Positions 41,568 to 55,462 of a DNA stretch of 64,000 nucleotides are shown here, piece after piece (the first letter of the stretch is position 1; every line of letters starts with the position of its first letter). Below the pieces are notes generated by a model. That model made no database searches and was not told where the DNA came from. It saw nothing but the letters and a program-made list of their open reading frames with translations. The stretch is from IMG/VR virus record IMGVR_UViG_3300022921_000002, positions 62,001-126,000 of that record. The stretch is one strand, 5' to 3'. The position numbers and the translations under genes were made by a program.

Positions 41568-41634
<67 letters not shown>

Positions 41635-41644
<10 letters not shown>

Positions 41645-41802
41645 TTTCTTGTTATAAGATCAAGAACAATGCTCAACTCATATATTGATTTATCTAAAAC
41701 TAAATGAGCAGTTTTATCATCATTCTTTTTCTTTTCTTCGCGAAGAAACTCTAACCTTACCTTTATATAGTTTTCTGCTTCAGGTTTGTTTCCTCTACGC
41801 AT
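41635..41802 (-). CDS. Small hypothetical protein between tRNAs (55 aa)
   Basis: MRRGNKPEAENYIKVRLEFLREEKKK...; SD AAGGA; stop overlaps the tRNA-Pro 5' end. Confidence 0.5.
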
Positions 41803-41819
41803 AATATATCCTTTTTATT

Positions 41820-41893
41820 TGGCAAGGGTGGTAGGAATCGAACCCACACCAACGGGTTTGGAATCCGTTGTACTGCCATTATACTACACCCTA
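41820..41893 (-). tRNA. tRNA-Trp(CCA)
   Basis: Cloverleaf with TTCCAAA anticodon loop, GTGGG-TTCGATT-CCTAC T-arm, G discriminator and CCA; mismatches at pairs 1-72 and 31-39. Confidence 0.88.
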
Positions 41894-43039: not shown

Positions 43040-43504
43040 TTATTTTTTCATTTTAGCGGCTGCTTTATCAACTTCCTCTTGTGATACAACACCTTCAGAT
43101 AACAGACGTGCTCGGTTTGTGTTATGAGCTGCTTGTGTGTCATCTTTTGATCCACCTGTATATGGTACAGCATGACCTTCACTAATCATAATAGCAGTTA
43201 CCATACGACCATCTTCAGCAATAAAATCACCGAGGATACGACCAAACTTACCCTTCATATCTTCACCGTCTTTTGCAGCAAATGTTTTAAGTGTAGTTGT
43301 TTTGCCAAGGATGCCTTTTAGTCTATTCTTTGCGGCTAATCCAAATACCTTTTCAACCTTATCGGATGTGCGTGACTCAGGAGTATCAATACCCATAATA
43401 CGTACTCGCTCATCTTTCATCCAAATACCAAATCCTAGATCAATGTCTACATCCACTGTATCACCGTCCACGATTTTAGTTACGTGTGCTTTATATTCAT
43501 ACAT
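43040..43504 (-). CDS. Thermonuclease (SNase-like)
   Basis: IVDGDT, RVRIMGIDTPE, GKFGRIL. Confidence 0.88.
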   Translation of the reverse strand: MYEYKAHVTKIVDGDTVDVDIDLGFGIWMKDERVRIMGIDTPESRTSDKVEKVFGLAAKNRLKGILGKTTTLKTFAAKDGEDMKGKFGRILGDFIAEDGRMVTAIMISEGHAVPYTGGSKDDTQAAHNTNRARLLSEGVVSQEEVDKAAAKMKK

Positions 43505-43563
43505 TCTTTGATTCCTTTTATGATTTAAGAGCTCAAAGAATTATAATATAAGTTGCTCAGGTA

Positions 43564-43872
43564 TTATTTATTAAGTTCAAACCGTTCTTCGACGTGCTCA
43601 ATACAAGCAGCAATGATATGGCCGATAGTCGGTTCACTATCAATCCATAATCTAACCGCATAGTTATCAATATCAACGTCAGGAAAGAACTTCTCCTCAG
43701 CTGCCATGATGAAATATAGTACACCCATAGAATCCATAATATCATCAAGTGCTGATTCTAAAGTAATGTCATCACGTCTGTAGTCATCTTTCAAGTATTC
43801 AAGTGCCCAATCATACATTTGTTCAAGAGGTGGGCCGCCATATTTTGTAACCATATCCAATTCCTTATTCAT
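43564..43872 (-). CDS. Acyl carrier protein, NodF-like
   Basis: ITLESALDDIM-DS-MGVLYFIMAAEEKF keeps the ACP DS-x7-MAxEExF register; acidic, 102 aa. Confidence 0.7.
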   Translation of the reverse strand: MNKELDMVTKYGGPPLEQMYDWALEYLKDDYRRDDITLESALDDIMDSMGVLYFIMAAEEKFFPDVDIDNYAVRLWIDSEPTIGHIIAACIEHVEERFELNK

Positions 43873-43880
43873 CTGTATCT

Positions 43881-43909
43881 ACTATATCAAACTTTATTTA
43901 CTTTGTCAA
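43881..43909 (-). promoter_or_regulatory. Sigma70 promoter TTGACA-17-TATAGT for the ACP gene
   Basis: Consensus boxes immediately upstream of 43872. Confidence 0.65.
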
Positions 43910-43921
43910 CAACTTTTGCCT

Positions 43922-43929
43922 TATAAATA
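43922..43929 (+). promoter_or_regulatory. Late promoter TATAAATA heading the curli operon
   Basis: Exact match 21 nt upstream of 43950. Confidence 0.8.
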
Positions 43930-43949
43930 ACCGTAGAGGAGTATTAATT

Positions 43950-44228
43950 ATGGATTTTTTAACGCTTGTTGGTGATGTAGGTTTCCCTATTGCTGGTGCC
44001 CTAGCTGCCGGTGTATTTGTATTTATCACACTTAAGTTTATCCTTGCAAGCGTTACTGACACTGTAAATTCCCTCAAAAATATTATGACGGGTTTGGACA
44101 ACCGAGTTCAGACTATGAATAACGATTTAGTGAAAATTGATGCCCTTTTAAGTTATGCTCTAAATGTTAAACCAAACATTGACCGCATAGCTGCAAATGA
44201 AGGCAAGGATGATGCAAGGAGAGATTAA
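43950..44228 (+). CDS. Small membrane protein (paralogue of 44588..44968)
   Basis: GDVGFPIAGA...LDNRVQTMNNDL. Confidence 0.7.
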   Translation: MDFLTLVGDVGFPIAGALAAGVFVFITLKFILASVTDTVNSLKNIMTGLDNRVQTMNNDLVKIDALLSYALNVKPNIDRIAANEGKDDARRD

Positions 44229-44398
44229 TGCTTTGGAAAGATTTACTATTAATGAAATTTAAAAATGGTTTTCGCATTCTCAATAACGACGATGATAAAT
44301 TTTTTGTTATTGACGACGTGAAACTAAATATCGGTGACATTTATCGAGTTGGCCCAAACGGTTACTTCGAGTTAATTGAAGAAGGACCGCCGCTATGA
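44228..44398 (+). CDS. Small hypothetical protein (56 aa)
   Basis: Manual translation; TAATG and ATGA coupling on both sides; resembles 44395..44586. Confidence 0.6.
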   Translation: MLWKDLLLMKFKNGFRILNNDDDKFFVIDDVKLNIGDIYRVGPNGYFELIEEGPPL

Positions 44399-44586
44399 TG
44401 TGGATGGAATATGCGATTAATCAAGCTGGAAAAAACTTTGAAATAAAAGGTGACTGGCCCGGAGAGGTTATGGGAAAACTAAAAGACGGTACGGATAAAG
44501 AATATTATCTATACAAACCAGGCGATAAGTTTATAGTTAATGAAGATGGTTGGTTGATGCATCACGGAAACATTAACGAGGAATAA
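44395..44586 (+). CDS. Small hypothetical protein
   Basis: YKPGDKFIVNEDGWL, compared with LNIGDIYRVGPNGYF in the preceding ORF. Confidence 0.6.
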   Translation: MMWMEYAINQAGKNFEIKGDWPGEVMGKLKDGTDKEYYLYKPGDKFIVNEDGWLMHHGNINEE

Positions 44587-44587
44587 T

Positions 44588-44968
44588 ATGGAATTTGACA
44601 TTGCAGGAGCCATAAGTGAATATGGATTTCCTATAGTTGCGGCTTTTGGAATGGGCTATTTTATATTTTTTATATGGAAATGGGTTACGGAAGTAATTGA
44701 TCCGGTCCTAGGTGAAGCGATGTTTACTTTGATTAAATTAGTAGATCGTGTACGTATGCTTGATAATGATATGATTAGACTTAATAGCAAGTTATCTATG
44801 GTACTTGAATATAGGTCAAAACTAAATCCTAAGCGACAAGATGAGTTGCATAGGTTGGTTGCCGAATATCAGGCAGGTAGTAAAGCGTTTAATTCAACTG
44901 GGGTTGTAGATGAAGAAAATATTAACAATAGTGGCGGTGATGATGCCGGCACAGGTAATAGCAAGTGA
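44588..44968 (+). CDS. Small membrane protein (paralogue of 43950..44228)
   Basis: SEYGFPIVAA...LVDRVRMLDNDM. Confidence 0.7.
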   Translation: MEFDIAGAISEYGFPIVAAFGMGYFIFFIWKWVTEVIDPVLGEAMFTLIKLVDRVRMLDNDMIRLNSKLSMVLEYRSKLNPKRQDELHRLVAEYQAGSKAFNSTGVVDEENINNSGGDDAGTGNSK

Positions 44969-45371
44969 ATTAGTTTGGGGATTTAAATCTCCCGCTTTTC
45001 ATTATGGTAATGGATATTCAACTCACGTTTTGTCGGTTGAACAACTTTCTCACAACAGAAAACAAGATTATAAAGACGAGCAACAACGTATTGCCGATGA
45101 ACTTGAGCGAGAAGCAGAAAATACTACTTTAGCCAAATTCCTTCGCAACGTAGAGTCAAGAATTTACGCTACGTTATCCAAACAAATGGTTGATGCTATG
45201 TTTGCCGATTGTGGCGACAGTTGTTCCAACAGCGGTTCAACTGACCTTGAAGATAATACGATTGCTTGGTTAAGAGACCCGGTAACAGGTTCTATCACAT
45301 TAACGATTACCGAAGCAGATGGTAGTACTACTGAAATCACAATACCAGGTGCTGGGGAGTTTAATTTCTAA
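44910..45371 (+). CDS. csgF: Curli assembly protein CsgF-like
   Basis: Signal peptide then ELVWGFKSPAF...EQ (CsgF N-terminus); directly upstream of csgG. Confidence 0.75.
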   Translation: MKKILTIVAVMMPAQVIASELVWGFKSPAFHYGNGYSTHVLSVEQLSHNRKQDYKDEQQRIADELEREAENTTLAKFLRNVESRIYATLSKQMVDAMFADCGDSCSNSGSTDLEDNTIAWLRDPVTGSITLTITEADGSTTEITIPGAGEFNF

Positions 45372-46184
45372 ATGAGATTTTTACCCTTCATACTAATATT
45401 CTTTTTAAGTGCCTGCGCAACACCCGGAAGTTTGAAAGTTTTAGGTGACCTTGATAAATCTCCAACATTATCAGGAAGTCCTATTGATGATAGATTACTC
45501 GCCGTTCCTGAACTGTCAGGTCCAAAGATTACAATTGCAGTTTATGAATTTGCCGATAAGACAGGTCAAAGAAAGACGAGTTCCAACTCATCATTATCAA
45601 GTGCCGTAACTCAAGGTGCTGAGGTTTGGGTAATTAAAGCATTACAAGATGTGGGCAATCAAACATGGTTTGAGGTAGTTGAAAGAGTTGGCATTGATAA
45701 TCTAATTAAAGAAAGACAGCTTATTCGCCAAACGCGTGAAGTATATGAAAAAGAAAAAGAAAAAGGCCCGACACCTTTACAGCCAATGTTATTTGCCGGC
45801 TTATTACTTGAAGGTGGTGTTGTAGGTTATGACTCCGATACCGCGGCCGGTGGAGTAGGTGCAAGATTCCTAGGAGTCGGAGCCTCAACAGAATATAGAG
45901 TTGATACAGTAACAGTTGTTATGAGACTTGTGAGTGTTAATTCAGGAAAGGTGTTAATGAGTATCGCAACTGAGAAATCAATTGCAAGTTACAGATCTTC
46001 AACCGATGTATTTAAATTTATTGATTTAGGACAAGAAAATATTGAGGTTGAAAATGGGTATTCCGTAAATGAACCTGTGAACTATGCAGTAAGGGCTGCA
46101 ATAGAACAGGGTGTGATAGAATTGGTTAAAGACGGGGTCGATAAGGGATTATGGTCGTATAAAATAAAAGAGATAAGAGGATAG
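45372..46184 (+). CDS. csgG: Curli secretion channel CsgG
   Basis: Lipobox FLSAC, IAVYEFADKTGQRK, AVTQGA, WFEVVER, EGGVVGYD, EPVNYAVRAAIE. Confidence 0.93.
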   Translation: MRFLPFILIFFLSACATPGSLKVLGDLDKSPTLSGSPIDDRLLAVPELSGPKITIAVYEFADKTGQRKTSSNSSLSSAVTQGAEVWVIKALQDVGNQTWFEVVERVGIDNLIKERQLIRQTREVYEKEKEKGPTPLQPMLFAGLLLEGGVVGYDSDTAAGGVGARFLGVGASTEYRVDTVTVVMRLVSVNSGKVLMSIATEKSIASYRSSTDVFKFIDLGQENIEVENGYSVNEPVNYAVRAAIEQGVIELVKDGVDKGLWSYKIKEIRG

Positions 46185-46186
46185 AA

Positions 46187-46924
46187 ATGAAGCATTTCAT
46201 ATTTTTGATTATGATGATGTTTGGTTCTGCAGCCTATGCCAACGATATCTACATTACACAAAGCGGTGACAATTTAGATTTAGACATAACACAAGATGGG
46301 CAAGATAACGAATTCGGTGATAGTACCACTGATGCAACTTTGACGGGTGATACAATGACTTTTAATATCACCCAAACAGGTGATTTTAACAAGATTGACG
46401 TTATCATTGATGGTAACAACTACACAGGTACTTGGGCATTTACAGGTGACGATAACACTGTTGATATGACTTGTGATTCCGCATCAGGTTTGAATTGTGA
46501 AACAGTTCAGGTTGATGTTACTGTTATAGGTGATGATTCTGACTTTAAGATTTACATTGGTGAAACAGCAGATGCCGATAGTTTAGTTGCTGACTTTACT
46601 GTTACAGGTGATGGTAACGCATTTTATCTTGATGCTGATGGCACAAATCAGAATTTTGATGTTAATGTTAATTCAAGCGCAACATTACTTACAGCAGGTA
46701 CAGATCGTACACATTTAACTTACGATGTTAATGCTGATAGTGCCGGTAACTTGATTGCTATTGACAGCACAGGAGATGGTGATGTTAATGGGCATGAAGT
46801 AGATCTTACAGTTACTGGTGGCGGCGGAGATTTTATTATTGTTCAAAGCGGTATTTACGATAATCTCGTAAACGCAACTTTCAGTGGAGATTCAGCAAAT
46901 GTTCAAATTACACAATCTGATTAA
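46187..46924 (+). CDS. Curlin-repeat-like secreted protein
   Basis: Signal peptide; NDIYITQSGDNLDLDITQDGQDN and repeated xQ/TxGDxN units; very acidic. Confidence 0.7.
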   Translation: MKHFIFLIMMMFGSAAYANDIYITQSGDNLDLDITQDGQDNEFGDSTTDATLTGDTMTFNITQTGDFNKIDVIIDGNNYTGTWAFTGDDNTVDMTCDSASGLNCETVQVDVTVIGDDSDFKIYIGETADADSLVADFTVTGDGNAFYLDADGTNQNFDVNVNSSATLLTAGTDRTHLTYDVNADSAGNLIAIDSTGDGDVNGHEVDLTVTGGGGDFIIVQSGIYDNLVNATFSGDSANVQITQSD

Positions 46925-48069
46925 TGAAATTTCATACTATTGGCTTCATTGCCATTCTGCTGATACCGAGCTTATGCTTTGGCGCTGTAGATGAAGATGC
47001 GGGGGCAATCGGTGAATTTTCAGGATCAGGAGTCATTGAGCGTGGGAGAGATGTTATTGATGGTGGCCAAGGTGTTGGGGTGCAACCCATGGATACCGCC
47101 GTCACAGCAAAAGGCCGAATGCGAATCGACTTTATTGATGATACGAGAGTCGATATTACCGAACACGCAAGGTTAGTAATTGATGATTTCGTTTATGACC
47201 CAAATGCTGGGACTGGTAAGCTGGGATTACGTGCGACATTGGGAACAGTACGCTATGCGTCTGGAGCAATTGCAAAGAACAGCAGAAGAAACGTCAGCAT
47301 CAAAACACCGTCAGCAACGATAGGTGTACGTGGTACTGATTTCGTTATGGTGGTTGATGAAATAGGTGGCACGATGGTGACATTATTACCATCGTGTTCC
47401 ATCGACTCCCTCGGAAAAACCAATTGCGTGACCGGTGAAATTTCAGTTGAGTCTGACACCGGGTTTGTTATTATGAATAAAGCATTTCAGGCAACAATAG
47501 TAAAAAGCAGATGGACAAAACCAACTAAGCCATTATTATTGGCGCTTAATGAAAGTGACATAACAAACCTTTTGATTTTAAGAAAGAAAAAACCTTTATT
47601 TGAAGAAGATGGGCAACCATTAGAACAAATGACGGATTTCCTAGATATAGATTTCTTAAATTTTGACGGTTTGGATGTTGATATTTTATCCGATAGTATT
47701 AAAGACATATGGTTAACAGAGTTTGATTTAAGAGATAGTGATTATTATCTCGGTGAACTACTACACGACATGGTTGAACAATTAAACATTGCTTTAATGC
47801 GAAGACTTATGGGTGAATTAGATGCACAGAATGCCGAGTTCTTTAATTTCAGAGAAGAAGGTTATGATCCTGTAACAAGAATTACTTTAAACAGAGAAGA
47901 TCCTAGTTGGATTTTTGAAAGAGACGATAGTGGTTATTATCACCACCTAAGAATATATGTGGAGCAGCAATATGGATATACGATTAATATCCAACAACAG
48001 GACGAGTATGTTTGGGATTACCGTCTTGGCGTTGGTAATAATAATATTGACATCATCCAAATCAAATAG
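46924..48069 (+). CDS. FecR-domain protein
   Basis: Signal/TM segment, DDTRVDITEHARLVID, GTVRYASG, IKTPSATIGVRGTDF. Confidence 0.88.
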   Translation: MKFHTIGFIAILLIPSLCFGAVDEDAGAIGEFSGSGVIERGRDVIDGGQGVGVQPMDTAVTAKGRMRIDFIDDTRVDITEHARLVIDDFVYDPNAGTGKLGLRATLGTVRYASGAIAKNSRRNVSIKTPSATIGVRGTDFVMVVDEIGGTMVTLLPSCSIDSLGKTNCVTGEISVESDTGFVIMNKAFQATIVKSRWTKPTKPLLLALNESDITNLLILRKKKPLFEEDGQPLEQMTDFLDIDFLNFDGLDVDILSDSIKDIWLTEFDLRDSDYYLGELLHDMVEQLNIALMRRLMGELDAQNAEFFNFREEGYDPVTRITLNREDPSWIFERDDSGYYHHLRIYVEQQYGYTINIQQQDEYVWDYRLGVGNNNIDIIQIK

Positions 48070-48850
48070 TGGACCAAATGAAGTTTATATGTATCAAACA
48101 GGTGACGACTTTACGTTAACTATCACCCAAGATGGCAGTCAGAATTATATAACTGGTGTAAGTGGACAGACTAAAGGTATTGAAGGTGACAACAATACGG
48201 TTGATATGGTACAAATAGGACAGTATCATGGTATCGCAGGAATGTTAGATGGTGATAACAATAACATAGATTTTTATCAAGGTGGCGGTGGTGACAGCGG
48301 AATGATTACTGCAATGGTAACAGGTAATAATAATGACCTGGTGGTGTGGCAAGGTAAGCATCCTGATGGTACAACTGACTTGTCAGAAGGCGGTGACCAC
48401 ACTGCAACGGTTACCATTACTGGTGATTATAATGATATTAAGGCCGGACAAACTGATCAAGGACAAATTAATCAAACTTATGGTAGGCATGAATTAACCG
48501 CAGAAATTACCGGTGATAGCAATGATGTTGGAATGACACAAAAAGGAAATCAAAAGCATACATTGGACCTTGATATTTCTGGTGATGGTAATGATGTTAC
48601 AACTTATCAGCATGGTAATGGCGGACAAAAAACTGCAACCATTGAAGTTTCTGGCAACTATAACGTAATTGATGTAAACCAACGTGGAACAAATTCAGCG
48701 TCAGCAACCATTTCAGTAGAAAGCATATATGGTCCTGCCTATAATGTAACACTTAGCCAACAAACCGACACTTCTGCTAAATCATTTTCTTTAAGTGGTG
48801 TATGTAATGATCCAAATGGATGTGTCGTAAGTGTCGAGCAACACAACTAG
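47957..48850 (+). CDS. Second curlin-repeat-like secreted protein
   Basis: More than eight Q-x-G-x-x-N / GDxN repeats; true start probably 47975 or 48008. Confidence 0.7.
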   Translation: MWSSNMDIRLISNNRTSMFGITVLALVIIILTSSKSNSGPNEVYMYQTGDDFTLTITQDGSQNYITGVSGQTKGIEGDNNTVDMVQIGQYHGIAGMLDGDNNNIDFYQGGGGDSGMITAMVTGNNNDLVVWQGKHPDGTTDLSEGGDHTATVTITGDYNDIKAGQTDQGQINQTYGRHELTAEITGDSNDVGMTQKGNQKHTLDLDISGDGNDVTTYQHGNGGQKTATIEVSGNYNVIDVNQRGTNSASATISVESIYGPAYNVTLSQQTDTSAKSFSLSGVCNDPNGCVVSVEQHN

Positions 48851-48858
48851 GAGAAGTA

Positions 48859-48969
48859 ATGGATACAGTCGTCGCGTTTTTCATAGCAGGATTTTTTACA
48901 GCATTCGGTTGGTGGGCAGCAAACAAAATAACAACCCAAATTGATACACATATTGAGCAGGCTGAGTAA
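48859..48969 (+). CDS. 36-aa membrane peptide
   Basis: MDTVVAFFIAGFFTAFGWWAANKI...; SD AGGAG; TAATG coupling. Confidence 0.55.
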   Translation: MDTVVAFFIAGFFTAFGWWAANKITTQIDTHIEQAE

Positions 48970-49331
48970 TGGATTTAATTTTAAGTTTGGCTTTGTCAAC
49001 ACATTTGGGTCTTTCTCAAGATTATAATGAAATTCATCCTCATATAAGATTAACTAATGATAAATATATCGCAGGCGCATATTATAACAGCGTCGAAAAA
49101 TTGAGTGTATACTCAGGAATAAAATATAGTTATGGTGATATTGCAATAGAAGGAGGTGTGGCTACAGGCTATAGGCCACATCCAATAGCTCCTTATGGTA
49201 GGGTAACCTACGATTACGTGGATAATATAAGATTATTTGGGACTACGGCATTTGAATCCGACGGCTCTGCAGCTCGAGGAGGAATTGTATTAGGAATAGA
49301 ATTTATACTAAATCCACGGGAGAAGCAATGA
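48969..49331 (+). CDS. Small outer-membrane beta-barrel-like protein (PagP-like pattern)
   Basis: YNE.HP, AYYNS...S.Y.G, GVATGY...P motifs; alternating beta strands. Confidence 0.45.
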   Translation: MDLILSLALSTHLGLSQDYNEIHPHIRLTNDKYIAGAYYNSVEKLSVYSGIKYSYGDIAIEGGVATGYRPHPIAPYGRVTYDYVDNIRLFGTTAFESDGSAARGGIVLGIEFILNPREKQ

Positions 49332-51322
49332 AACATTTACTATTAACAACTGCATTAGTCATACCAAGCTGGGCTATTGCTGATACTTCGAGTTTACAAA
49401 CATCATCTCACGGTTTACTTGAGAACCAATGGGTTAAAGCTGGCATTAATAAAGACTCAGGCACATTTGGCTCTGGCGGAAGTACATCACCGGGCCTGTT
49501 ATTTGATCCTGAAGGTTCGGGTACATTTAATTCTAGTTATGATTATCTGACGCCTGGCTCGCCGTTTGACGGACAAGCACTAAAGGTAGATGGCACAAAT
49601 AAAGCAAATAATAATACAGGCTCAAAAACTATCGTTGACTCTGACGGTTTAACAGACGGCACAGACAGCATGACTTGGAGTGGTGATGTTGATGTTGATG
49701 GCGGTACATGGAATGTTGAAAATACATTTACATTAGAAGATAATAAACCATACATTGATGTTGAAACAAAAATTACCGCAGGTTCTGATGCTGATACTGT
49801 AGCATATGGTAAATTTATTGACCCAGACTCACAAGGTATGCCGGGAGATAGTTCATCAACAGATAACGTACTTGGGTATTCAGGTGTTCCTGATACAAAC
49901 ATTGCCTTTTCAGAAGCAACTGTTTCAAAGTATGCATTAGGTGTTTATTCAACGGATACAAACACTACTGCAGGCGTCAATGGTTGGTCATCAGAAGCAG
50001 ATGGATATAACGGAACAAGTTATACAGATGCCGAAGGCAATGCTGTCAATTACGGCAATTCAGATGATACTATTGGTATTAGTTGGTCTTGGACTGGTGT
50101 ATCAACAGGCGACATTCTTACAGCAAAATATGCTTATATCTTCGGCCCATCAGCGTTTGATGCACTTGATGATGCAGTAGATGGTGGAGCAGGCGGTGGT
50201 ACTCCTGGTGAATTACCTACAGGGTGGTCACTTGATGATGTTGGATCAGCAACAGATGCTGCCGAAAGCGGCGGAGCACCAACAGTTGTAAGTACCGCAA
50301 CCGAAACTATTACTTCAACATCAGAAGCAATAAGCACAACACTACCTGTTTTAACTGGTGCAATCACAACGCATGACTCATCTACAGCTGACGGTGTTCA
50401 AACTATTGACCGTGAAACTACTACGACTGTAACAACACCGATGGATGTAACAACCACAAGCTTTGTTAGAACTACTGATACTATGAGTGACGGCAGCGAA
50501 GTTGTTACAGACGGTACTCCAACATCAACTACAGTTGTTCGTAATGATGCTGTTGTAACTGTAACTGATCCAGGTTCATTCGTTGGACGTATGGATCAAG
50601 CATCGCAATTAATCGGATTAAATACTCATCGCAATTTAAATATAGCTGATGGCGTATCAGTAGGTCGCATTAACCATTCGATGGGTGATAACTACGAAGC
50701 AACATCAACGGTGGTTGGTCTTGGTCACACACTTGTAACCGACGATGCGTTAAGACTAAGCCTAGGTATTAATAGAATTGATACTGAAATGTCAGAAGGC
50801 GGCGATGGTGAAATAATAACAAACGCTGTGTCTGCTGAATTAGGAAAGGCAATAGAAGATAAAGACATTACCGTCGTAGGACGAGTAAACATGGCTAAAT
50901 CTGATATTGAATATTCAAGAACAATCGGTACTTTTTCTGCGGCAGGTGAAACATCAGCTTCTGACGTTTCTGCTGGGCTAACAATTGAAAAATCAACTGG
51001 TTCTGTTAGACCTTTCGGTGGATTAACTATCGGAAAATCAAGCACTGATGGATGGACTGAAACCGGAGATGTTCAAGCTGTTTTAACTCATGATGAAGCA
51101 GACGCTACATACAGATATGGTACAATAGGTTTCAATATTGATGAAGGACCAATTACCGCTACATTTAGTAAAAACATTGGCGACAATGATGCCACTAATA
51201 TAAGAATTGGTTTTGAACAAGAAATAAATGAATATGCTATTGTCGGTGTAGATTATAATAGAACTTTGGATGAAGATAATTCAAGCAATTATTTCTCAGC
51301 AGGTATCAAGATACGGTTTTAA
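49328..51322 (+). CDS. Autotransporter-like outer-membrane protein
   Basis: Signal peptide, acidic passenger, Thr-rich linker, C-terminal amphipathic strands ending SAGIKIRF. Confidence 0.65.
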   Translation: MKHLLLTTALVIPSWAIADTSSLQTSSHGLLENQWVKAGINKDSGTFGSGGSTSPGLLFDPEGSGTFNSSYDYLTPGSPFDGQALKVDGTNKANNNTGSKTIVDSDGLTDGTDSMTWSGDVDVDGGTWNVENTFTLEDNKPYIDVETKITAGSDADTVAYGKFIDPDSQGMPGDSSSTDNVLGYSGVPDTNIAFSEATVSKYALGVYSTDTNTTAGVNGWSSEADGYNGTSYTDAEGNAVNYGNSDDTIGISWSWTGVSTGDILTAKYAYIFGPSAFDALDDAVDGGAGGGTPGELPTGWSLDDVGSATDAAESGGAPTVVSTATETITSTSEAISTTLPVLTGAITTHDSSTADGVQTIDRETTTTVTTPMDVTTTSFVRTTDTMSDGSEVVTDGTPTSTTVVRNDAVVTVTDPGSFVGRMDQASQLIGLNTHRNLNIADGVSVGRINHSMGDNYEATSTVVGLGHTLVTDDALRLSLGINRIDTEMSEGGDGEIITNAVSAELGKAIEDKDITVVGRVNMAKSDIEYSRTIGTFSAAGETSASDVSAGLTIEKSTGSVRPFGGLTIGKSSTDGWTETGDVQAVLTHDEADATYRYGTIGFNIDEGPITATFSKNIGDNDATNIRIGFEQEINEYAIVGVDYNRTLDEDNSSNYFSAGIKIRF

Positions 51323-51758
51323 ATCTCGGTAACACCACACCGCATTGTTCCATAATCTTATAGAGTGTAAGTAATGCTTCGCACTCAAATTCATGGTAGG
51401 TTTTTTGATTTAAAACAATTGTATCTAATTCAGGAATGTCCATAGGGGCTATTACAATCTTATGAGGTAATAGCCCGCCGACATTAACAAGTCCTTCGAC
51501 AATAGGAGAGTTTGCTCTTGTTGTAATACCGATGATACAGTCAGCAAAAGTTCCGTATTCATATATCCATCTTTTATGCCAACCCTCATCACCACCCAAG
51601 GCGGTTAGGTGAATAGCATCAGGTGCAAAGCAATGTTTGCCAAGATGCCTTGTCATATCAGATGCAGCGTGTTGAGCAATAGCAAGGTTTCCGCCATTGC
51701 CTACAATAGCAATCTTTGGTGAATGAGATATTTTTTTAATAAGATTAAGATCTATCAA
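51306..51758 (-). CDS. SIS-domain phosphosugar isomerase (GmhA-like)
   Basis: IAIVGNGGNLAIAQHAASD, TALGGD, TYHEFE. Confidence 0.75.
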   Translation of the reverse strand: MIDLNLIKKISHSPKIAIVGNGGNLAIAQHAASDMTRHLGKHCFAPDAIHLTALGGDEGWHKRWIYEYGTFADCIIGITTRANSPIVEGLVNVGGLLPHKIVIAPMDIPELDTIVLNQKTYHEFECEALLTLYKIMEQCGVVLPRFKTVS

Positions 51759-52434
51759 GGTATTCCTCCACTAATTTTATATCGTCTGGTACATCAACCG
51801 CAGGTGTACGTTCATTAATCATATATGGTATAACATCAACCATTCCTATGAATGCTAATGTGTCTAGTCCTTTATGTGCATATACTAATTCTTGATCATA
51901 TTCTGGAAAATGCATAATTGTACCAAGATCATATGCATATAAGCCATTAATACCAACAAGATTAGGACTATCAATTAATTCACGGTCAGGTGTTCGTGTT
52001 AAGTAAACAATTTTCCCATTGCTGATAACAGCCTTAACTACGTTTACATTACTTCTTTCTTCATCGGTTAATGGATAACAACACTGAACCATTTCAGCAT
52101 TTGTTTCAAACATTTTACGAATGATTCCAGATATCATTTCAGGTGTAACACACGGTTCATCACTTTGTAAATTCACAATATAATCAGCATCAGTTTGAAT
52201 AACCGCCTCAGCAACTCGTGAAGTACAAGTGTTGTGAATCTTTTTTGTTTTAATAAGATTAGGCGCCCATATGCTGTCGTATTCGTCAGCAGCTACATAT
52301 ACTTTATTAATATCTGCGCAAGCGTTCGCGTTATCAATACAATGATTAAGAACAGATTTACCGTTTACTTCGGCAAATATTTTGCTTGGGAAACGAGTTG
52401 ATCCTGTTCTTGCTGGTATAATACAATCAATCAT
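51745..52434 (-). CDS. kdsB: CMP-Kdo synthetase KdsB-like cytidylyltransferase
   Basis: IIPARTGSTRFPSK, HNTCTSRV, IVNLQSDEP, VKAV, GLYAY, VDVPDDI. Confidence 0.8.
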   Translation of the reverse strand: MIDCIIPARTGSTRFPSKIFAEVNGKSVLNHCIDNANACADINKVYVAADEYDSIWAPNLIKTKKIHNTCTSRVAEAVIQTDADYIVNLQSDEPCVTPEMISGIIRKMFETNAEMVQCCYPLTDEERSNVNVVKAVISNGKIVYLTRTPDRELIDSPNLVGINGLYAYDLGTIMHFPEYDQELVYAHKGLDTLAFIGMVDVIPYMINERTPAVDVPDDIKLVEEYLDRS

Positions 52435-53269
52435 TTAATATATTCCTTATTTCCTCGGGTTTCAAATATGATATAGTTGAATACTCGATAGGTGCGGATA
52501 CAGCTTCATTTCTGAATTGTAATATTTTGTTTGGGCTGATACCCATAAATCCCCACGTGTCGGGTAAGTTATCATAATAGTGAGTATATTTGGTTGTCGG
52601 TGTTCCCGTCATTCCTGCGGTGTAATAAGTACCGCCGTCATAACTAAAATGGTGTGTGGTTGATAACAATATATCATAGATTTCTTCCATTGTCAAGGAG
52701 TAATGAATAAATTTTACACCATACCCAAACTCGTGAGCAATTTTAGTTATGTTCGGTAATATTGTTTTTTCTTTTTCCATTAATCCGCCGATCCGTCGCT
52801 TTGACATTAACGGTTCAGATTTATGAATTGAAACGAATTTACCTTTCTTATTCCATTGTTTTTTAAACGGCCATAATTGATTTACCGTCCAAGGTGTTGC
52901 AACTGTCTGCTTTTGTTCGTACCGATATATGCTTACAATCATACCATTCTTAGGAGGTAGCATATTATTAAGAAACCATTTCATAACATCATATGAGGTT
53001 TCGGCATTACTAGGTTTACGTTTAAATGGATTGATAAATTGTTCAGGCCACATAATAGAAACACGATATGGGCCTTGTGCATAGTCTTCATCTGACATTA
53101 ATTGTGCTTTAAAGAAAACATCACTTAATAAACACATAATAGTGCAGTGAGCATGGGCTGTATCAGCACAAAAACGTACTATGTGGGATGATGTTGGCAG
53201 TGAAATGCTTTTATTATTTTCACAACCTATATAAATAGTTTCAATTAGATTTGCCATGATATAATCCAT
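52427..53269 (-). CDS. Possible GT9 (heptosyltransferase)-like glycosyltransferase
   Basis: LTMEEIYDILLSTTHHFSYDGGTYYTAGMTGTPT resembles the GT9 D-S-G-x-x-H-x-A...P motif. Confidence 0.5.
   Translation of the reverse strand: MDYIMANLIETIYIGCENNKSISLPTSSHIVRFCADTAHAHCTIMCLLSDVFFKAQLMSDEDYAQGPYRVSIMWPEQFINPFKRKPSNAETSYDVMKWFLNNMLPPKNGMIVSIYRYEQKQTVATPWTVNQLWPFKKQWNKKGKFVSIHKSEPLMSKRRIGGLMEKEKTILPNITKIAHEFGYGVKFIHYSLTMEEIYDILLSTTHHFSYDGGTYYTAGMTGTPTTKYTHYYDNLPDTWGFMGISPNKILQFRNEAVSAPIEYSTISYLKPEEIRNILND
53230..53237 (+). promoter_or_regulatory. Late promoter TATAAATA (Cys-rich peptide/cyclase/lipase operon)
   Basis: Exact match inside the 5' end of the opposite-strand gene. Confidence 0.65.
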
Positions 53270-53300: not shown

Positions 53301-53423
53301 ATGATAGGTCAAGAGAGATTTTGTAAAAAGTGTGGTCACCGCTGCCACTGTTATGCATCAGACTGTAAAGAATGTGTCAATGATGTTTGCACAAGCTGTG
53401 ATTGTAAGAAAGATAAAGAATGA
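53301..53423 (+). CDS. Cys-rich metallothionein-like peptide (40 aa, 9 Cys, 2 His)
   Basis: MIGQERFCKKCGHRCHCYASDCKECVNDVCTSCDCKKDKE; SD AAGGAG; ATGA overlap with the cyclase. Confidence 0.7.
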   Translation: MIGQERFCKKCGHRCHCYASDCKECVNDVCTSCDCKKDKE

Positions 53424-55462
53424 AAAATATTTTATTATCTCCTATATGGAGCATATTATTGTTAGGGTTACTTGCTTGGCTGCATACTATTAATCCTTCA
53501 TTCATTGAAAGTTTAAGATTACGGTATTTTGACCAGCTTATTGTAAATCAAGAGGTTGTCCCAAATAACATTTATTCAGTAAACATTGATGAAGATGCAA
53601 TAACCGAATATGGACAATGGCCATTTCCTAGACAAGTATACTCAGAATTTATTATAGATCTGTACAATAGAGGTGCAGGTCTTGTTGTTTTAAATATTCT
53701 TATGTCTGAACCTGATAGATCCGGCGGAGATGAAGACCTTGCTATAACTATGCAGCAAGTACCAATAATTTTAACCATGCTTGGAGCTGAGGAGAACAAA
53801 AATGAAGCGATTAATCCAGGAGCCTCTATTATTAATAGCGATTATATTTCTCTCATTCCAAGTGTACCTGGGATTATCGCTAACATCAATGAGCTTGAAA
53901 CTAATGCAGTGGGGTCAGGAATCATCAACACATTCCCAGAGATCGACGGGGTTACCCGCAGAGCACCGTTGGTATTCGAGTCCGGGGGGAACCTCTTCCC
54001 TAATGTCACCCTTGAGGTATTGCGAGTCCTTGCCGGAGACCCATCCTTCCAAATCAAGTTGTCGCCGCTCGGGGTTGATAAATTAAGAATACCACAATTT
54101 GGAATGATACCAACAAATGAGGTTGGCGAGGTATGGATAGATTGGTCTCAAGGTTATCAATCAGAATCAATAATGAATTTGCCAGATGATTTAGGAGGTG
54201 CTGTAGTATTTGTTGGACCAACAGCTGCAGGTACTATTCAACCGATTTCAACTGCGGTTGGTGGAGTATATCCACAAGAAATACAAGCAGCAATGCTTGG
54301 TACTGTATTTAATGAGTCAAACATCACACGTCACGCCGATGCAAAAGCATGGGGTGAACTGGCTGCTCTAATTGTAGCAGGGCTATTAATAATTGGTTTA
54401 TCCTATTGGACTTTTATAGGCATCGGCGCATTCGTATTAACGATTGGCGGCTTTATAGGAGGGTCTATCTATGTATTCCAAAGTTCAAATTTACTTATTG
54501 ACGGCATCACTATTTCTGTTATGCTGTTCCTTGTTGGTAGTTTACGATATATTGTAAAATTCGTAGACGAGTTTTTACAGAAACAAGCAATCAAAAAACA
54601 ATTCGCGGGTTACGCTTCACCAACGGTTGTTAAGTTATTACAAGAAAATCCGTCGTTAGTTAAGGATGGGCAAAAGAAAGACGTATCAATAGTATTCAGT
54701 GACCTTCGCGGTTTTACTCCTTTAGGAGAAAGCTTTGGCGATGATGTTAAAGGCTTAACGGAGATTATGAATGGTTATATGGATGCAATAACCGAACCAG
54801 TATTAGATGCCAATGGCATGATTATTAAGTATATCGGCGATGCTTCAATGCATATTCACAACGCACCGATAGATGATCCTGACCACCCACGAACCGCGGT
54901 GCAAGTGGCTTTCAAAATGCTGAAAGCAGTGGAGAAATTTAATGTGGCACTTCAAAGAAGTAACCGGCCGCCAGTGGGCATGGGTGCTGGTATTAATTCT
55001 GGCCTGGGTTACATTGGGGAGATGGGTAGTAGTAAGCGGCACAGCTACGACATACTTGGGGATGCTGTATCAACAGCAGCAAGAATTGAGTCTAAATGTA
55101 AAGAATATGGAATGGTACTCCTCATTGGAGAAGAAACGCAACGCCACACAGCTGATGAATTCTTTTACCTCAAGATCGACGACTTGGCAGTCAAAGGTAA
55201 ATCGGTAGGAATTGGAATTTGGACAGCACTTGATGATGTAAAACAACCATGGTATGCAGCACAGAAAAAACACCAAGAAATGTTTGCTGCGTATCAAGCA
55301 CAAGATTTTGATAAAGCTATTGAACTATGTGATATATTACATGGCCACTTTGATAATAAAATGGACGGATATTATGATATGTGGAAAGAAAGATGTGAAT
55401 ATATGAAAACACAAGACCTTCCAGAAGATTGGAACGGCGTATTTATTGCGACCACAAAATGA
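53420..55462 (+). CDS. CHASE2-domain class III adenylate cyclase
   Basis: CHASE2 (GQWPFPR, DGVTRR, YPQEIQA), three TM helices, cyclase motifs FSDLRGFT, KYIGDA, GINSG, GDAVSTAARIES. Confidence 0.92.
   Translation: MKNILLSPIWSILLLGLLAWLHTINPSFIESLRLRYFDQLIVNQEVVPNNIYSVNIDEDAITEYGQWPFPRQVYSEFIIDLYNRGAGLVVLNILMSEPDRSGGDEDLAITMQQVPIILTMLGAEENKNEAINPGASIINSDYISLIPSVPGIIANINELETNAVGSGIINTFPEIDGVTRRAPLVFESGGNLFPNVTLEVLRVLAGDPSFQIKLSPLGVDKLRIPQFGMIPTNEVGEVWIDWSQGYQSESIMNLPDDLGGAVVFVGPTAAGTIQPISTAVGGVYPQEIQAAMLGTVFNESNITRHADAKAWGELAALIVAGLLIIGLSYWTFIGIGAFVLTIGGFIGGSIYVFQSSNLLIDGITISVMLFLVGSLRYIVKFVDEFLQKQAIKKQFAGYASPTVVKLLQENPSLVKDGQKKDVSIVFSDLRGFTPLGESFGDDVKGLTEIMNGYMDAITEPVLDANGMIIKYIGDASMHIHNAPIDDPDHPRTAVQVAFKMLKAVEKFNVALQRSNRPPVGMGAGINSGLGYIGEMGSSKRHSYDILGDAVSTAARIESKCKEYGMVLLIGEETQRHTADEFFYLKIDDLAVKGKSVGIGIWTALDDVKQPWYAAQKKHQEMFAAYQAQDFDKAIELCDILHGHFDNKMDGYYDMWKERCEYMKTQDLPEDWNGVFIATTK

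What the first reader, a model, noticed from the sequence alone, without database searches (positions are those of the whole stretch)
43922..48850. Late-promoter curli (type VIII secretion)-like operon with two curlin-like substrates
Seen: TATAAATA, four small genes, csgF, csgG, curlin-like protein 1, FecR and curlin-like protein 2, all tightly coupled. Both curlin-like proteins have signal peptides and Q-x-G-x-x-N type repeats. No csgE or csgC is visible. Known: CsgG/CsgF secrete and nucleate amyloid curli; csgF/csgG genes have been noted in SAR11 and OM43 myophages, with function unresolved. Inference: late expression of a full export-plus-subunit set suggests the infected cell builds a surface fibre or pore (aggregation, receptor masking, or outer-membrane breach at lysis). 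Here it occurs in a phage whose host looks more Rhodobacterales-like.
Basis: partly seen in the sequence, partly recalled or inferred. Interest (0 to 1): 0.72.

Follow-up and report, generated by a model that had tools for sequence, protein, structure and literature searches.

The report
Phage curli secretion module, already described
A large marine T4-like phage carries a complete, late-expressed set of genes for exporting curli-type surface fibres; the gene set is real and intact, but the same module was already described in SAR11 and OM43 phages in 2022 and its role remains untested.

Summary
A TATAAATA motif at 43922 is followed by nine tightly coupled + strand genes. These are four small proteins, CsgF, the CsgG lipoprotein, curlin-like protein 1, a FecR-domain protein and curlin-like protein 2. 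CsgE and CsgC are absent from the whole 221-kb phage genome.

The motif behaves as a T4-type late promoter here. About 25 of the 32 genome copies are intergenic, and one sits 45 nt upstream of the major capsid gene.

Curlin 1 is the weaker call by Pfam. It models as a beta-solenoid whose best solved match among 48,161 chains is a curli CsgA fibre subunit.

The module is not new. Wittmers et al. 2022 described "HK"-CsgF-CsgG-CsgA/B-FecR-CsgA/B-adenylate cyclase in pelagiphages, and the GenBank records of Melnitz and HTVC008M annotate it.

Four things are specific to this case:
- The host phage is a 221-kb salt-marsh phage with a phiM12-like capsid.
- The operon runs on past the finding into a small membrane protein, a small OMP-like protein and a type Va autotransporter.
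- That insertion pushes the CHASE2 adenylate cyclase 4.5 kb downstream.
- The so-called HK proteins have no kinase domains.

Function is still inferred, and the Rhodobacterales host claim could not be supported.

The parts
43922..43929 (+). T4-type late promoter motif TATAAATA, 28 nt upstream of the first ATG of the operon
   Evidence: Positional enrichment across the genome, and the same motif 45 nt upstream of gp23. A TATAAATA lies 7-30 nt upstream of the first small gene or of CsgF in about 35 of the 82 related loci examined.
43950..44228 (+). Small bitopic membrane protein s1 (92 aa): N-terminal transmembrane helix plus coiled coil. This is the "HK" of Wittmers et al.
   Evidence: phrog_18771 at 3.5e-30. 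No HisKA or HATPase_c domain; only weak DUF948. 75% identical to the Melnitz homologue. Co-occurs with s4 in 32 of 32 loci with enough flank.
44228..44398 (+). Small soluble protein s2 (56 aa), function unknown
   Evidence: No family match. Homologues at 66-83% identity lie next to the module in many related loci.
44395..44586 (+). Small soluble protein s3 (63 aa), function unknown
   Evidence: No family match. Homologues lie next to the module in many related loci.
44588..44968 (+). Small bitopic membrane protein s4 (126 aa), a paralogue of s1
   Evidence: phrog_18771 at 5.8e-28. BLASTP against s1 gives 4e-11. Its nearest Atlas clusters are viral only.
44910..45371 (+). CsgF homologue with a signal peptide
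   Evidence: PF10614, 45 bits against a cut-off of 25.8. phrog_35372 at 7e-48. The N-terminal F-K-N/S-P-x-F...G-x-G-Y-S-x-H-V-L motif is nearly invariant in 56 viral homologues.
45372..46184 (+). CsgG outer-membrane lipoprotein channel (lipobox L-S-A-C)
   Evidence: PF03783, 170 bits. 174 bits to the solved E. coli CsgG 3x2r/4uv3. The constriction loop is conserved, with Leu in place of E. coli F56 in 93% of 63 viral homologues.
46187..46924 (+). Curlin-like protein 1 (245 aa, signal peptide): the conserved member of the pair
   Evidence: PF07012 scores 19-22 bits, borderline. The family profile's two best PDB hits are curli subunits 8c50 (E 0.0027) and 8enq (E 0.0067). The AlphaFold2 model has pLDDT 84 and is all-beta. 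Its best solved match among 48,161 chains is Pontibacter CsgA 8c50, Z 17.6. A curlin-like gene directly follows CsgG in 73 of 73 loci.
46924..48069 (+). Periplasmic FecR-domain protein (381 aa): signal peptide, no anti-sigma domain
   Evidence: PF04773, 35.9 bits. In the AlphaFold2 model the N-domain 27-205 is confident. Foldseek matches the PupR C-terminal cell-surface signalling domain 6ovk at E 8.5e-5. Present in 58 of 58 loci.
47972..48850 (+). Curlin-like protein 2 (about 292 aa; start may be 47957, 47972 or 48008): the variable member of the pair
   Evidence: PF07012, 47.5 bits with 4 repeat matches. 7-8 repeats of 22-24 aa. Homologous to curlin 1, BLASTP 1e-10, with a shared N-terminal motif. 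A conserved C-terminal Cys pair across relatives. Present in 46 of 54 loci.
48859..48969 (+). Small transmembrane protein (36-49 aa), tightly coupled downstream of curlin 2
   Evidence: No family match.
48969..49331 (+). 120-aa protein with a weak match to a PagP-like outer-membrane family
   Evidence: phrog_3600 at 1.2e-8. No Pfam or NCBIfam match.
49328..51322 (+). Type Va autotransporter-like outer-membrane protein (664 aa: signal peptide, Thr-rich passenger, C-terminal beta-barrel ending in Phe)
   Evidence: The C-terminal 300 aa score PF03797 at 31.3 bits against a cut-off of 26. In the nearest Atlas cluster, which is viral, 55% of members carry PF03797. Homologues lie downstream of curlin 2 in L023 (45% identity, before the cyclase) and in L073 (42%, where the locus ends before any cyclase).
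53230..53237 (+). Second TATAAATA, 190 nt upstream of the cyclase gene
53420..55462 (+). CHASE2-sensor adenylate/guanylate cyclase. It is part of the module but here separated from curlin 2 by a 4.5-kb insertion.
   Evidence: PF05226, 111.8 bits, and PF00211, 61.5 bits. It directly follows curlin 2 in Melnitz and HTVC008M. Present in 32 of 32 loci with enough flank.

Best explanation
This is a member of the viral type VIII (curli-type) secretion module already known from pelagiphages. Here it sits in a 221-kb T4-like salt-marsh phage.

**Proposed mechanism**
1. The string of genes from 43950 to at least 48850, and probably to 51322, is transcribed late in infection from a T4-type late promoter.
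2. All core products are exported by Sec.
3. CsgG is lipidated and forms the outer-membrane channel. CsgF docks in it through its conserved N-terminal peptide.
4. The two homologous, Asp/Asn/Gln/Gly-rich curlin-repeat proteins pass through it. Outside the cell they fold into beta-solenoid units that stack into surface fibres.
5. Curlin 1 is conserved and always present. It is more likely the CsgF-proximal nucleator or anchor. Curlin 2 varies in length and is sometimes absent. It is more likely the elongating or outermost subunit.
6. The FecR-domain protein is a soluble periplasmic protein, not an iron regulator. Together with the CHASE2 adenylate cyclase it probably forms an envelope-to-cytoplasm signalling branch that reports on the secretion machine or the envelope.

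**Likely net effect.** The surface of the dying cell and its debris is remodelled: coated, aggregated or receptor-masked. The autotransporter, the PagP-like protein and the LPS-sugar genes inserted in the same place fit this.

**Shown:** gene content, homology, export signals, the fold of curlin 1, conservation of the module, and promoter-motif behaviour.

**Inferred:** export through CsgG, fibre formation, the division of labour between the two curlins, FecR-cyclase coupling, and the benefit to the phage.
For: **Homology of the parts.** CsgG and CsgF score above the Pfam cut-offs. CsgG scores 174 bits to the solved E. coli CsgG.

**Conserved functional sites.** The CsgG constriction loop and the CsgF N-terminal peptide are nearly invariant in 63 and 56 viral homologues.

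**Curlin 2.** Curlin_rpt 47.5 bits, with 7-8 repeats of 22-24 aa.

**Curlin 1.** The family profile's two best PDB hits are the two solved curli subunits. The AlphaFold2 model (pLDDT 84) best matches CsgA 8c50 at Z 17.6 in an unbiased scan of 48,161 chains.

**The two curlins are related.** BLASTP gives 1e-10, and they share an N-terminal motif directly after the signal peptide.

**Export.** Signal peptides or a lipobox are present on all five core proteins.

**Module conservation in IMG/VR loci.** CsgF 76/76, a curlin directly after CsgG 73/73, FecR 58/58, curlin 2 46/54, cyclase 32/32, s1+s4 32/32.

**Late promoter.** About 25 of the 32 TATAAATA copies are intergenic in a 95%-coding genome. 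One lies 45 nt upstream of gp23. A gp33-like co-activator is present. The motif recurs upstream of the module in about 35 related loci.

**FecR domain.** It matches the periplasmic signalling domain of PupR. FecR-domain genes lie next to or within about 1.6 kb of CHASE2 cyclases in 16 of about 70 bacterial loci from several phyla. A FecR-domain gene also sits next to a CHASE2 kinase in the Burkholderia biofilm operon (PMC5192318).

**Literature.** Wittmers et al. 2022 describe the same module and detect its transcripts at sea (PMC9599517).
Against: - No experiment exists for any viral curlin. Buchholz et al. saw no clumping of Melnitz-infected cells (PMC9004378).
- Foldseek found no significant match for the curlin 1 model. 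In the VIA scan, generic beta-helices follow closely (Z 14-16), and the CsgA match has a high rmsd of 8.7 A.
- Curlin 1 is borderline for Pfam Curlin_rpt at 19-22 bits. Curlin 2 scores only 19 bits against the E. coli CsgA equivalog model, whose cut-off is 160.
- The CsgE gate/adaptor is absent.
- CsgG constriction residues differ from E. coli: Y51, N55 and F56 become Ser, Ser and Leu.
- Transcription of this operon was not shown. RNA-library contigs of 40-53 kb span both strands, so DNA carry-over cannot be excluded.
- The FecR x CHASE2 complex prediction gave no verdict.
- Late expression leaves little time for fibres to act before lysis.
Confidence: 0.6

Rival explanations
1. Lysis-timing pore (Buchholz et al. 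2022). CsgG, with or without CsgF, has been repurposed as a gated outer-membrane pore or pinholin-like device that helps trigger or time lysis. The curlin-like proteins are irrelevant or vestigial. The two small bitopic membrane proteins could then be holin/antiholin-like partners.
For: - The operon has a late promoter.
- There is no CsgE gate.
- No T4-type holin (PF11031) or T4 lysozyme (PF00959) was found in the 221-kb genome.
- s1 has a weak holin PHROG hit at E 0.008. s4 has weak holin and PspB-like look-alikes in the Atlas, which are leads only.
- The hypothesis is published (PMC9004378).
Against: - The premise of that paper, that csgA and csgB are absent, does not hold. Two curlin-repeat genes are conserved with the pore: 73/73 and 46/54 loci. 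They are annotated in the authors' own GenBank record.
- CsgG is an outer-membrane lipoprotein, so it cannot depolarise the inner membrane.
- The CsgF N-terminal docking peptide is under strong conservation. This argues for a canonical CsgG-CsgF complex.
- The same module occurs in podoviruses.
Confidence: 0.12
2. Secreted or periplasmic non-amyloid beta-solenoid proteins. The two curlin-like proteins are acidic, possibly Ca2+-stabilised, monomeric adhesins or surface-coat proteins. They use CsgG for export, or stay in the periplasm, and do not polymerise into curli fibres.
For: - Curlin 1 is 16% Asp and only 4% Gln.
- VIA matches include a Ca2+-dependent beta-helical antifreeze protein and the RsaA S-layer protein, at Z 11-13.
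- The conserved Cys pairs in both proteins are unusual for E. coli curlins.
- No clumping was seen in Melnitz cultures.
Against: - The best structural and best sequence matches are to curli subunits solved as fibres. One of them, Pontibacter CsgA, is equally Asp-rich.
- The pair of related subunits and the presence of CsgF mirror the nucleator/subunit logic of curli.
Confidence: 0.15
3. Open uptake channel. Without CsgE, the CsgG pore serves mainly to let small molecules (cofactors, siderophores, nutrients) into the infected cell. FecR and the cyclase sense them.
For: - CsgE is absent.
- The hypothesis was raised by Zaragoza-Solas 2020 and Wittmers 2022.
- A FecR-domain protein is present.
Against: - It does not explain two conserved secreted curlin proteins, or CsgF.
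- The FecR-domain protein lacks the anti-sigma domain, and no TonB-dependent transducer partner was seen in the region.
- A late promoter is an odd time to import nutrients.
Confidence: 0.05

Closest known systems
Viral T8SS (curli) module of pelagiphages: Wittmers et al. 2022 mSystems (PMC9599517); Zaragoza-Solas et al. 2020 (PMC7029224); GenBank records of Pelagibacter phage HTVC008M (KC465899) and Methylophilales phage Melnitz (MZ577097)
   Same: - Same genes in the same order: two small membrane proteins ("HK"), CsgF, CsgG, curlin, FecR, curlin, CHASE2 adenylate cyclase.
- Protein identities to Melnitz and HTVC008M range from 32% to 75%.
- Same lack of CsgE, CsgC and CsgD.
   Different: - The carrier is a 221-kb phage from salt marsh. 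Its gp23 is slightly closer to Sinorhizobium phages phiN3 and phiM12 (72.8%) than to Melnitz (69%) or HTVC008M (68%).
- The cyclase is displaced 4.5 kb by an insertion. The insertion carries a small transmembrane protein, a PagP-like protein, an autotransporter and three opposite-strand sugar/LPS genes.
- Two extra small genes sit between the two membrane proteins.
Bacterial curli system (E. coli csgBAC-csgDEFG; solved CsgG-CsgF 6l7a/6si7; CsgA fibres 8enq, 8c50)
   Same: - CsgG shows clear homology to the solved E. coli protein (174 bits, E 2.6e-50), and the CsgF N-terminal motif is retained.
- There are two related curlin-repeat subunits with Q-x-G-x-x-N-type repeats of about 22 aa.
- Curlin 1 has a beta-solenoid model.
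   Different: - CsgE, CsgC and CsgD are absent.
- The constriction has Ser/Ser/Leu instead of Tyr/Asn/Phe.
- The curlins are longer (245 and about 292 aa), very acidic and carry conserved Cys pairs.
- A FecR-domain gene lies between the two subunit genes.
- The module is phage-borne and driven by a late promoter.
FecR-domain protein plus CHASE2 sensor pairs in bacteria (for example the Burkholderia BiofilmReg operon, PMC5192318)
   Same: A secreted FecR-domain protein is encoded near a membrane sensor with a periplasmic CHASE2 domain. This holds in 16 of about 70 bacterial loci here and in the published operon.
   Different: - In the phage the pair is embedded in a curli operon.
- In this window the two genes are 5.3 kb apart.
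- The output domain is a cyclase, not a histidine kinase.
- Direct binding was not supported or refuted.

Membership tests
Type VIII (curli) secretion system | CsgG-family outer-membrane lipoprotein channel | tested here: met
   PF03783, 170 bits. 174 bits, E 2.6e-50, to the solved E. coli CsgG. L-S-A-C lipobox.
Type VIII (curli) secretion system | CsgF accessory protein with an N-terminal peptide that docks in the CsgG barrel | tested here: met
   PF10614, 45 bits against a cut-off of 25.8. The F-K-N/S-P-x-F motif aligns with E. coli F-R-N-P-N-F (the E. coli motif is from my own knowledge). It is nearly invariant in 56 viral homologues. Docking itself was not tested.
Type VIII (curli) secretion system | Secreted subunits built of curlin repeats | tested here: met
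   Curlin 2: PF07012, 47.5 bits, 4 matches. Curlin 1: 19-22 bits, borderline. Its profile's two best PDB hits are 8c50 and 8enq, and its model best matches 8c50 at Z 17.6.
Type VIII (curli) secretion system | CsgE periplasmic adaptor/gate and CsgC chaperone (gammaproteobacterial type) | tested here: not met
   No PF10627 or PF10610 match at E<=1 in the whole genome. These proteins are also missing from many non-gammaproteobacterial curli loci according to the literature cited. Their absence therefore excludes the E. coli type, not T8SS as such.
Type VIII (curli) secretion system | CsgG-dependent export and extracellular amyloid polymerisation of the subunits | not testable with these tools
   This needs expression, Congo red/ThT assays and EM.
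E. coli CsgA / CsgB equivalogs | Score above the NCBIfam equivalog cut-off | tested here: not met
   Curlin 2 scores 19 bits against a cut-off of 160 for CsgA. Curlin 1 has no hit. Neither protein can be named CsgA or CsgB.
Viral T8SS module (Wittmers et al. 2022) | Gene set and order: small membrane proteins, CsgF, CsgG, curlin, FecR, curlin, adenylate cyclase | tested here: met
   The cyclase is present but displaced by a 4.5-kb insertion.
Histidine kinase (the label given to the small upstream proteins) | HisKA and HATPase_c domains | tested here: not met
   The proteins are 92 and 126 aa. Each has one transmembrane helix plus a coiled coil. No kinase domain is found in Pfam even at E<=10, and NCBIfam gives no hit.
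FecR-type anti-sigma regulator | Periplasmic FecR / cell-surface-signalling domain | tested here: met
   PF04773, 35.9 bits. Foldseek matches the PupR CCSSD 6ovk at E 8.5e-5 and 4m0n at E 1.7e-4.
FecR-type anti-sigma regulator | N-terminal cytoplasmic anti-sigma domain followed by a transmembrane helix | tested here: not met
   The FecR domain starts at about residue 27, directly after a signal peptide. There is no room for an anti-sigma domain.
T4-type late promoter | TATAAATA placed shortly upstream of late genes, with late-transcription factors present | tested here: met
   About 25 of 32 copies are intergenic, with P about 1e-26. The motif lies upstream of gp23. A gp33-like gene sits at genome 146684-146872. 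gp55 was not searched for. Timing of transcription was not measured.
Type Va autotransporter (the 664-aa downstream protein) | Signal peptide, passenger region, C-terminal autotransporter beta-domain | tested here: met
   PF03797 scores 31.3 bits against a cut-off of 26 on the C-terminal 300 aa. The protein has a signal peptide and a terminal Phe. Atlas neighbours carry PF03797.

The most novel reading that the evidence does not exclude
The module is more than a fibre exporter. It is a self-contained envelope sensor-and-effector circuit. The periplasmic FecR-domain protein reads the state of the CsgG/curlin secretion machine or of the outer membrane, and passes it to the CHASE2 cyclase. The resulting cAMP reprograms the host late in infection. 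The obligatory pair of small bitopic membrane proteins, which are PspB- or holin-like, links this to inner-membrane integrity and the timing of lysis. Bacterial FecR-CHASE2 pairs, and the curlin-FecR-curlin triad seen without a nearby CsgG in an alphaproteobacterial MAG (L093), would then be cellular relatives of the two halves of the circuit.
Probability: 0.12. Interest if true: 0.7.

Novelty: new member of a known kind. Interest (0 to 1): 0.35.

Why it matters
Viral curli modules are widespread in the ocean. Wittmers et al. 2022 found them at every GOV2.0 station, at about 0.1% of assembled viral proteins. What they do is still unknown.

This case adds four modest points:
- The module is not confined to SAR11 and OM43 phages of about 140 kb. 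It also sits in a 221-kb salt-marsh T4-like phage with a rhizobiophage-like capsid.
- It is preceded by a motif that demonstrably marks late genes in this genome.
- The junction between curlin 2 and the cyclase is a hot spot that collects further outer-surface genes. This favours a surface-remodelling role over a lysis-pore role.
- The published "HK" and "iron regulator" labels are not borne out at domain level.

It does not open a new experimental route. Cultured phages (HTVC008M, Melnitz) already carry the module.

Tried and rejected
- **Foldseek on the curlin 1 model.** Searches against PDB and AlphaFold/Swiss-Prot gave nothing significant (best E 0.1-0.2). Only the exhaustive VIA scan ranked CsgA first.
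- **phmmer of curlin 2 against PDB sequences.** No hit.
- **Complex prediction.** The CHASE2 periplasmic domain (residues 26-312) against the mature FecR-domain protein (residues 21-381), using matched alignments, gave no verdict with a score of 0.00. This is no evidence either way.
- **Expression check.** Three metatranscriptome libraries hold 98-99% of the region's sampled words. Their contigs are 40-53 kb long and cross divergent genes at flat depth. DNA carry-over or whole-genome transcription cannot be told apart. A fourth library gives only patchy low-depth pieces. Transcription is therefore not shown.
- **Raw TATAAATA count in the window.** It is at chance level. Only the positional test is informative.
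- **Terminator and sigma-70 scans of the region.** Both were at chance level. One strong sigma-70-like promoter points the other way, at 43909-43881.
- **Host assignment.**
  - MAG labels of related contigs are mutually inconsistent: Rhodobacteraceae, Legionellales, Pirellulales, Polynucleobacter, Pelagibacter, Flavobacteriaceae, Luteolibacter. These are probably mis-binned phage contigs.
  - Megablast of 24 kb against cultured phages found only a tRNA-Pro.
- **A CsgG next to the bacterial curlin-FecR-curlin triad (L093).** None was found on that contig. The only match in that MAG is weak and interrupted, on another contig.
- **Rejected: curlins as virion parts.** Their Sec signal peptides argue against this.
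- **Rejected: the FecR protein as an iron regulator.** It has no anti-sigma domain.

Full report
**1. What is there**

The window is bases 62001-126000 of a 221,447-bp IMG/VR virus record judged complete. It is a T4-like phage. It has a gp23 capsid gene (PF07068, 483 bits). Its nearest cultured relatives by gp23 are Sinorhizobium phages phiN3 and phiM12 (72.8%), then Melnitz (69%) and HTVC008M (68%).

The + strand carries an unbroken string of genes whose junctions are overlaps or gaps of at most 2 nt:

| Coordinates | Product | Key evidence |
|---|---|---|
| 43950-44228 | s1, 92 aa | phrog_18771 |
| 44228-44398 | s2, 56 aa | no family match |
| 44395-44586 | s3, 63 aa | no family match |
| 44588-44968 | s4, 126 aa | phrog_18771 |
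| 44910-45371 | CsgF | Pfam 45 bits, cut-off 25.8 |
| 45372-46184 | CsgG | Pfam 170 bits |
| 46187-46924 | curlin-like 1 | Curlin_rpt 19-22 bits |
| 46924-48069 | FecR-domain protein | Pfam 35.9 bits |
| 47972-48850 | curlin-like 2 | Curlin_rpt 47.5 bits, 4 repeat matches |

- CsgG scores 174 bits (E 2.6e-50) against the solved E. coli channel and starts with an L-S-A-C lipobox.
- CsgF, both curlins and the FecR protein start with hydrophobic signal peptides.
- CsgE and CsgC are absent from all six frames of the whole genome.

**2. The promoter**

TATAAATA at 43922-43929 lies 28 nt before the first ATG, with a GAGGAG ribosome-binding site between them. Counting the motif in the window says nothing (9 found, 8.8 expected). 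Position does.

- About 25 of the 32 genome copies lie in the 5% of the genome that is non-coding (P about 1e-26).
- Most lie 13-83 nt upstream of a same-strand start.
- One lies 45 nt upstream of the major capsid gene.
- The genome encodes a gp33-like late co-activator.
- The motif recurs 7-30 nt upstream of the first small gene or of csgF in about 35 of the 82 related loci examined.

The same intergenic region holds a near-consensus sigma-70-type promoter pointing the other way (43909-43881). The spacer therefore looks like a divergent early/late promoter region.

Timing itself was not measured. RNA libraries from salt-marsh samples contain the region. However, their assembled contigs are 40-53 kb long and cross both strands at flat depth, so transcription is not demonstrated.

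**3. Are the two proteins curlins?**

Curlin 2 is clear. It scores above the Pfam cut-off and has 7-8 repeats of about 22-24 aa with the pattern G-D-x-N-x-h-x-h-x-Q-x-G.

Curlin 1 was the weak point, so I tested it further.
- I aligned 35 viral homologues. The invariant columns are the Q, G and N positions of the repeat.
- The family profile, searched against all PDB sequences, ranked the two solved curli subunits first and second: Pontibacter CsgA 8c50 at E 0.0027 and E. coli CsgA 8enq at E 0.0067.
- The AlphaFold2 model (pLDDT 84, pTM 0.80, all-beta) was aligned to 48,161 representative PDB chains. It matched 8c50 best, at Z 17.6 with 22% identity, ahead of generic beta-helices at Z 14-16.
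- Foldseek found nothing significant.

The two curlins are homologous (BLASTP 1e-10). They share a motif directly after the signal peptide, N-[DE]-[IV]-Y-x-x-Q-x-G-D...I-T-Q-D-G-x-x-N, which is also kept in most curlin 2 relatives. Curlin 2 relatives vary from 226 to 503 aa and keep a C-terminal Cys pair. Curlin 1 relatives are uniform, at about 200-255 aa. Neither reaches the E. coli CsgA or CsgB equivalog models, so I do not name them A or B.

**4. This is a known module**

The phage collection returned Melnitz and HTVC008M. Their GenBank records already annotate CsgF, CsgG, curlin-associated repeat protein(s), a FecR domain protein (annotated as such in Melnitz only) and an adenylate cyclase, in the same order.

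- Zaragoza-Solas et al. 2020 reported the cluster.
- Buchholz et al. 2022 argued in their text that csgA and csgB are missing, and proposed a lysis pore.
- Wittmers et al. 2022 explicitly described HK-CsgF-CsgG-CsgA/B-FecR-CsgA/B-adenylate cyclase in podo- and myoviral pelagiphages. They showed its global distribution and metatranscriptome signal. They also discussed sibling capture, superinfection exclusion and import.

A scan of IMG/VR found 116 CsgG relatives. In the 80 loci fetched, wherever the contig reaches far enough, the counts are as follows:

| Gene | Loci with it / loci long enough |
|---|---|
| CsgF | 76/76 |
| A curlin directly after CsgG | 73/73 |
| FecR | 58/58 |
| Curlin 2 | 46/54 |
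| Cyclase | 32/32 |
| Both small membrane proteins | 32/32 |

The CsgG constriction loop and the CsgF N-terminal peptide are nearly invariant across these loci. In E. coli that peptide docks in the CsgG barrel (my own knowledge). This conservation argues against the idea that the viral CsgG and CsgF have drifted apart.

**5. What differs here**

First, the operon does not stop at 48850. Three further genes are tightly coupled to it:
- a 36-49-aa transmembrane protein;
- a 120-aa protein with a PagP-like PHROG hit;
- a 664-aa protein whose C-terminal 300 aa match the autotransporter beta-domain above the cut-off (31.3 bits against 26), and whose Atlas neighbours are viral autotransporter-like proteins.

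Three opposite-strand genes follow: a GmhA-like protein, a CMP-sugar cytidylyltransferase and an unknown. Only then come a second TATAAATA (53230) and the CHASE2 adenylate cyclase at 53420-55462.

In relatives the same curlin 2-cyclase junction holds variable small genes. The autotransporter recurs downstream of curlin 2 in two divergent loci, L023 and L073. A 92%-identical relative (L085) lacks it. The junction is an insertion hot spot that here collects outer-surface genes.

Second, the "HK" proteins are two paralogous bitopic membrane proteins of 92 and 126 aa with no kinase domain.

Third, the "FecR" protein is a signal-peptide-bearing periplasmic protein.
- Its N-domain matches the cell-surface-signalling domain of PupR.
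- It has no anti-sigma domain.
- A disordered linker and a small C-terminal beta domain follow the N-domain.

**6. FecR and the cyclase**

A profile of the viral FecR proteins was used to scan one genome per bacterial species.
- Full-length matches were all phage-type modules inside MAGs of unrelated taxa. These are most simply mis-binned phage contigs.
- True bacterial matches covered only the FecR domain.
- In 16 of about 70 such loci, from Alphaproteobacteria, Deltaproteobacteria, Myxococcota, Omnitrophota and Spirochaetales, the FecR-domain gene lies next to or within about 1.6 kb of a CHASE2 cyclase. None has CsgG nearby.
- A published Burkholderia biofilm operon pairs a LysM-FecR protein with a CHASE2 kinase.
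- One alphaproteobacterial MAG contig (L093) has curlin-FecR-curlin without CsgG.

I therefore read the viral module as a curli exporter fused to a FecR-CHASE2 signalling pair. A direct-binding prediction gave no verdict.

**7. Mechanism and rivals**

The best reading (confidence about 0.6) is late, Sec- and CsgG/CsgF-dependent export of two curlin-repeat subunits. They build beta-solenoid fibres on the infected cell, as part of a wider remodelling of the outer surface. The cyclase branch reports on the envelope.

The lysis-pore rival (0.12) draws some support:
- the late promoter;
- the missing CsgE;
- the absence of a T4-type holin or lysozyme family in the genome;
- weak holin-like hints for the small membrane proteins.

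Against it, its published premise, that no fibre genes are present, is wrong, and CsgG is an outer-membrane protein.

A non-amyloid secreted beta-solenoid (0.15) and an uptake pore (0.05) remain possible.

**8. Host**

The Rhodobacterales suggestion could not be supported.
- G+C across the window is 33-42%.
- The samples are salt-marsh and seawater.
- The one Rhodobacteraceae label comes from a MAG bin that also holds a second, unrelated phage contig at very different coverage.
- The capsid affinity to rhizobiophages hints at an alphaproteobacterial host, no more.

**9. Verdict**

This is a real, intact, well-conserved system and a correct observation. It is a new member of a kind described in 2022, with some case-specific features. 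Function is still open. Interest is moderate to low for novelty. The underlying biological question remains attractive.

Noticed in passing
window 48859-51322 (+): Three genes are translationally coupled to curlin 2: a small transmembrane protein, a 120-aa PagP-like protein and a 664-aa type Va autotransporter-like protein. Homologues of the autotransporter lie downstream of curlin 2 in two divergent phage loci, L023 and L073. Phage-encoded autotransporters appear to form sizeable viral-only clusters in the Atlas.
   Followed up: partly
window 51306-53269 (-): A convergent three-gene block: a GmhA-like sugar isomerase (weak match), a CTP_transf_3 cytidylyltransferase (83 bits) and a 280-aa unknown. 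It has its own TATAAATA at 53288-53281, 19 nt upstream. These are likely LPS or surface-sugar modification genes inserted inside the curli module.
   Followed up: partly
window 55761-56501 (+): A class-3 lipase (PF01764, 83 bits) lies just downstream of the cyclase. Lipase homologues also lie within a few kb of the module in several related loci (L012-L018, L023, L026).
   Followed up: no
window 43040-43909 (-): A divergent gene set (a 102-aa unknown and a staphylococcal-nuclease-like protein) sits behind a near-consensus sigma-70 promoter, TTGACA-17-TATAGT with an upstream TG, at 43909-43881. It is back to back with the late promoter of the curli operon.
   Followed up: no
window 41568-41893 (-): tRNA-Pro(UGG) and tRNA-Trp(CCA) genes. 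The tRNA-Pro is 87-93% identical to tRNA-Pro genes of unrelated Sinorhizobium, Aeromonas and Cronobacter phages.
   Followed up: no
L085-L092, L095 (genome contigs): Complete or near-complete phage-type curli modules sit in MAGs labelled Rhodobacteraceae, Legionellales, Pirellulales, Polynucleobacter, Pelagibacter, Flavobacteriaceae and Luteolibacter. One Rhodobacteraceae bin holds two different phage contigs at coverages 5.4 and 64. This looks like phage contigs mis-binned into MAGs, and it is a trap for host prediction.
   Followed up: partly
L093:8024-10835: An alphaproteobacterial MAG contig with cytochrome c genes carries curlin-like, full-length FecR-like (39% identity) and curlin-like genes in a row, with no CsgG or CsgF on the contig. 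It is a possible cellular relative of the viral curlin-FecR-curlin core.
   Followed up: partly
phage records ON529851-ON529860: Brevundimonas jumbo phages of about 350 kb encode a distant CsgG-like protein (26-28% identity). This is outside the pelagiphage-type module. Their context was not examined.
   Followed up: no
window 48553-48647 (inside curlin 2): Assemblies of several salt-marsh runs split into alternative short contigs here, with 1-2 differences (for example A>G at 48617). This points to strain-level variation in a curlin 2 repeat.
   Followed up: no
whole genome G000: No T4-type holin (PF11031) or T4 lysozyme (PF00959) family match was found anywhere in the 221-kb genome. The lysis genes of this phage are unidentified. 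Other lysin families were not searched.
   Followed up: partly
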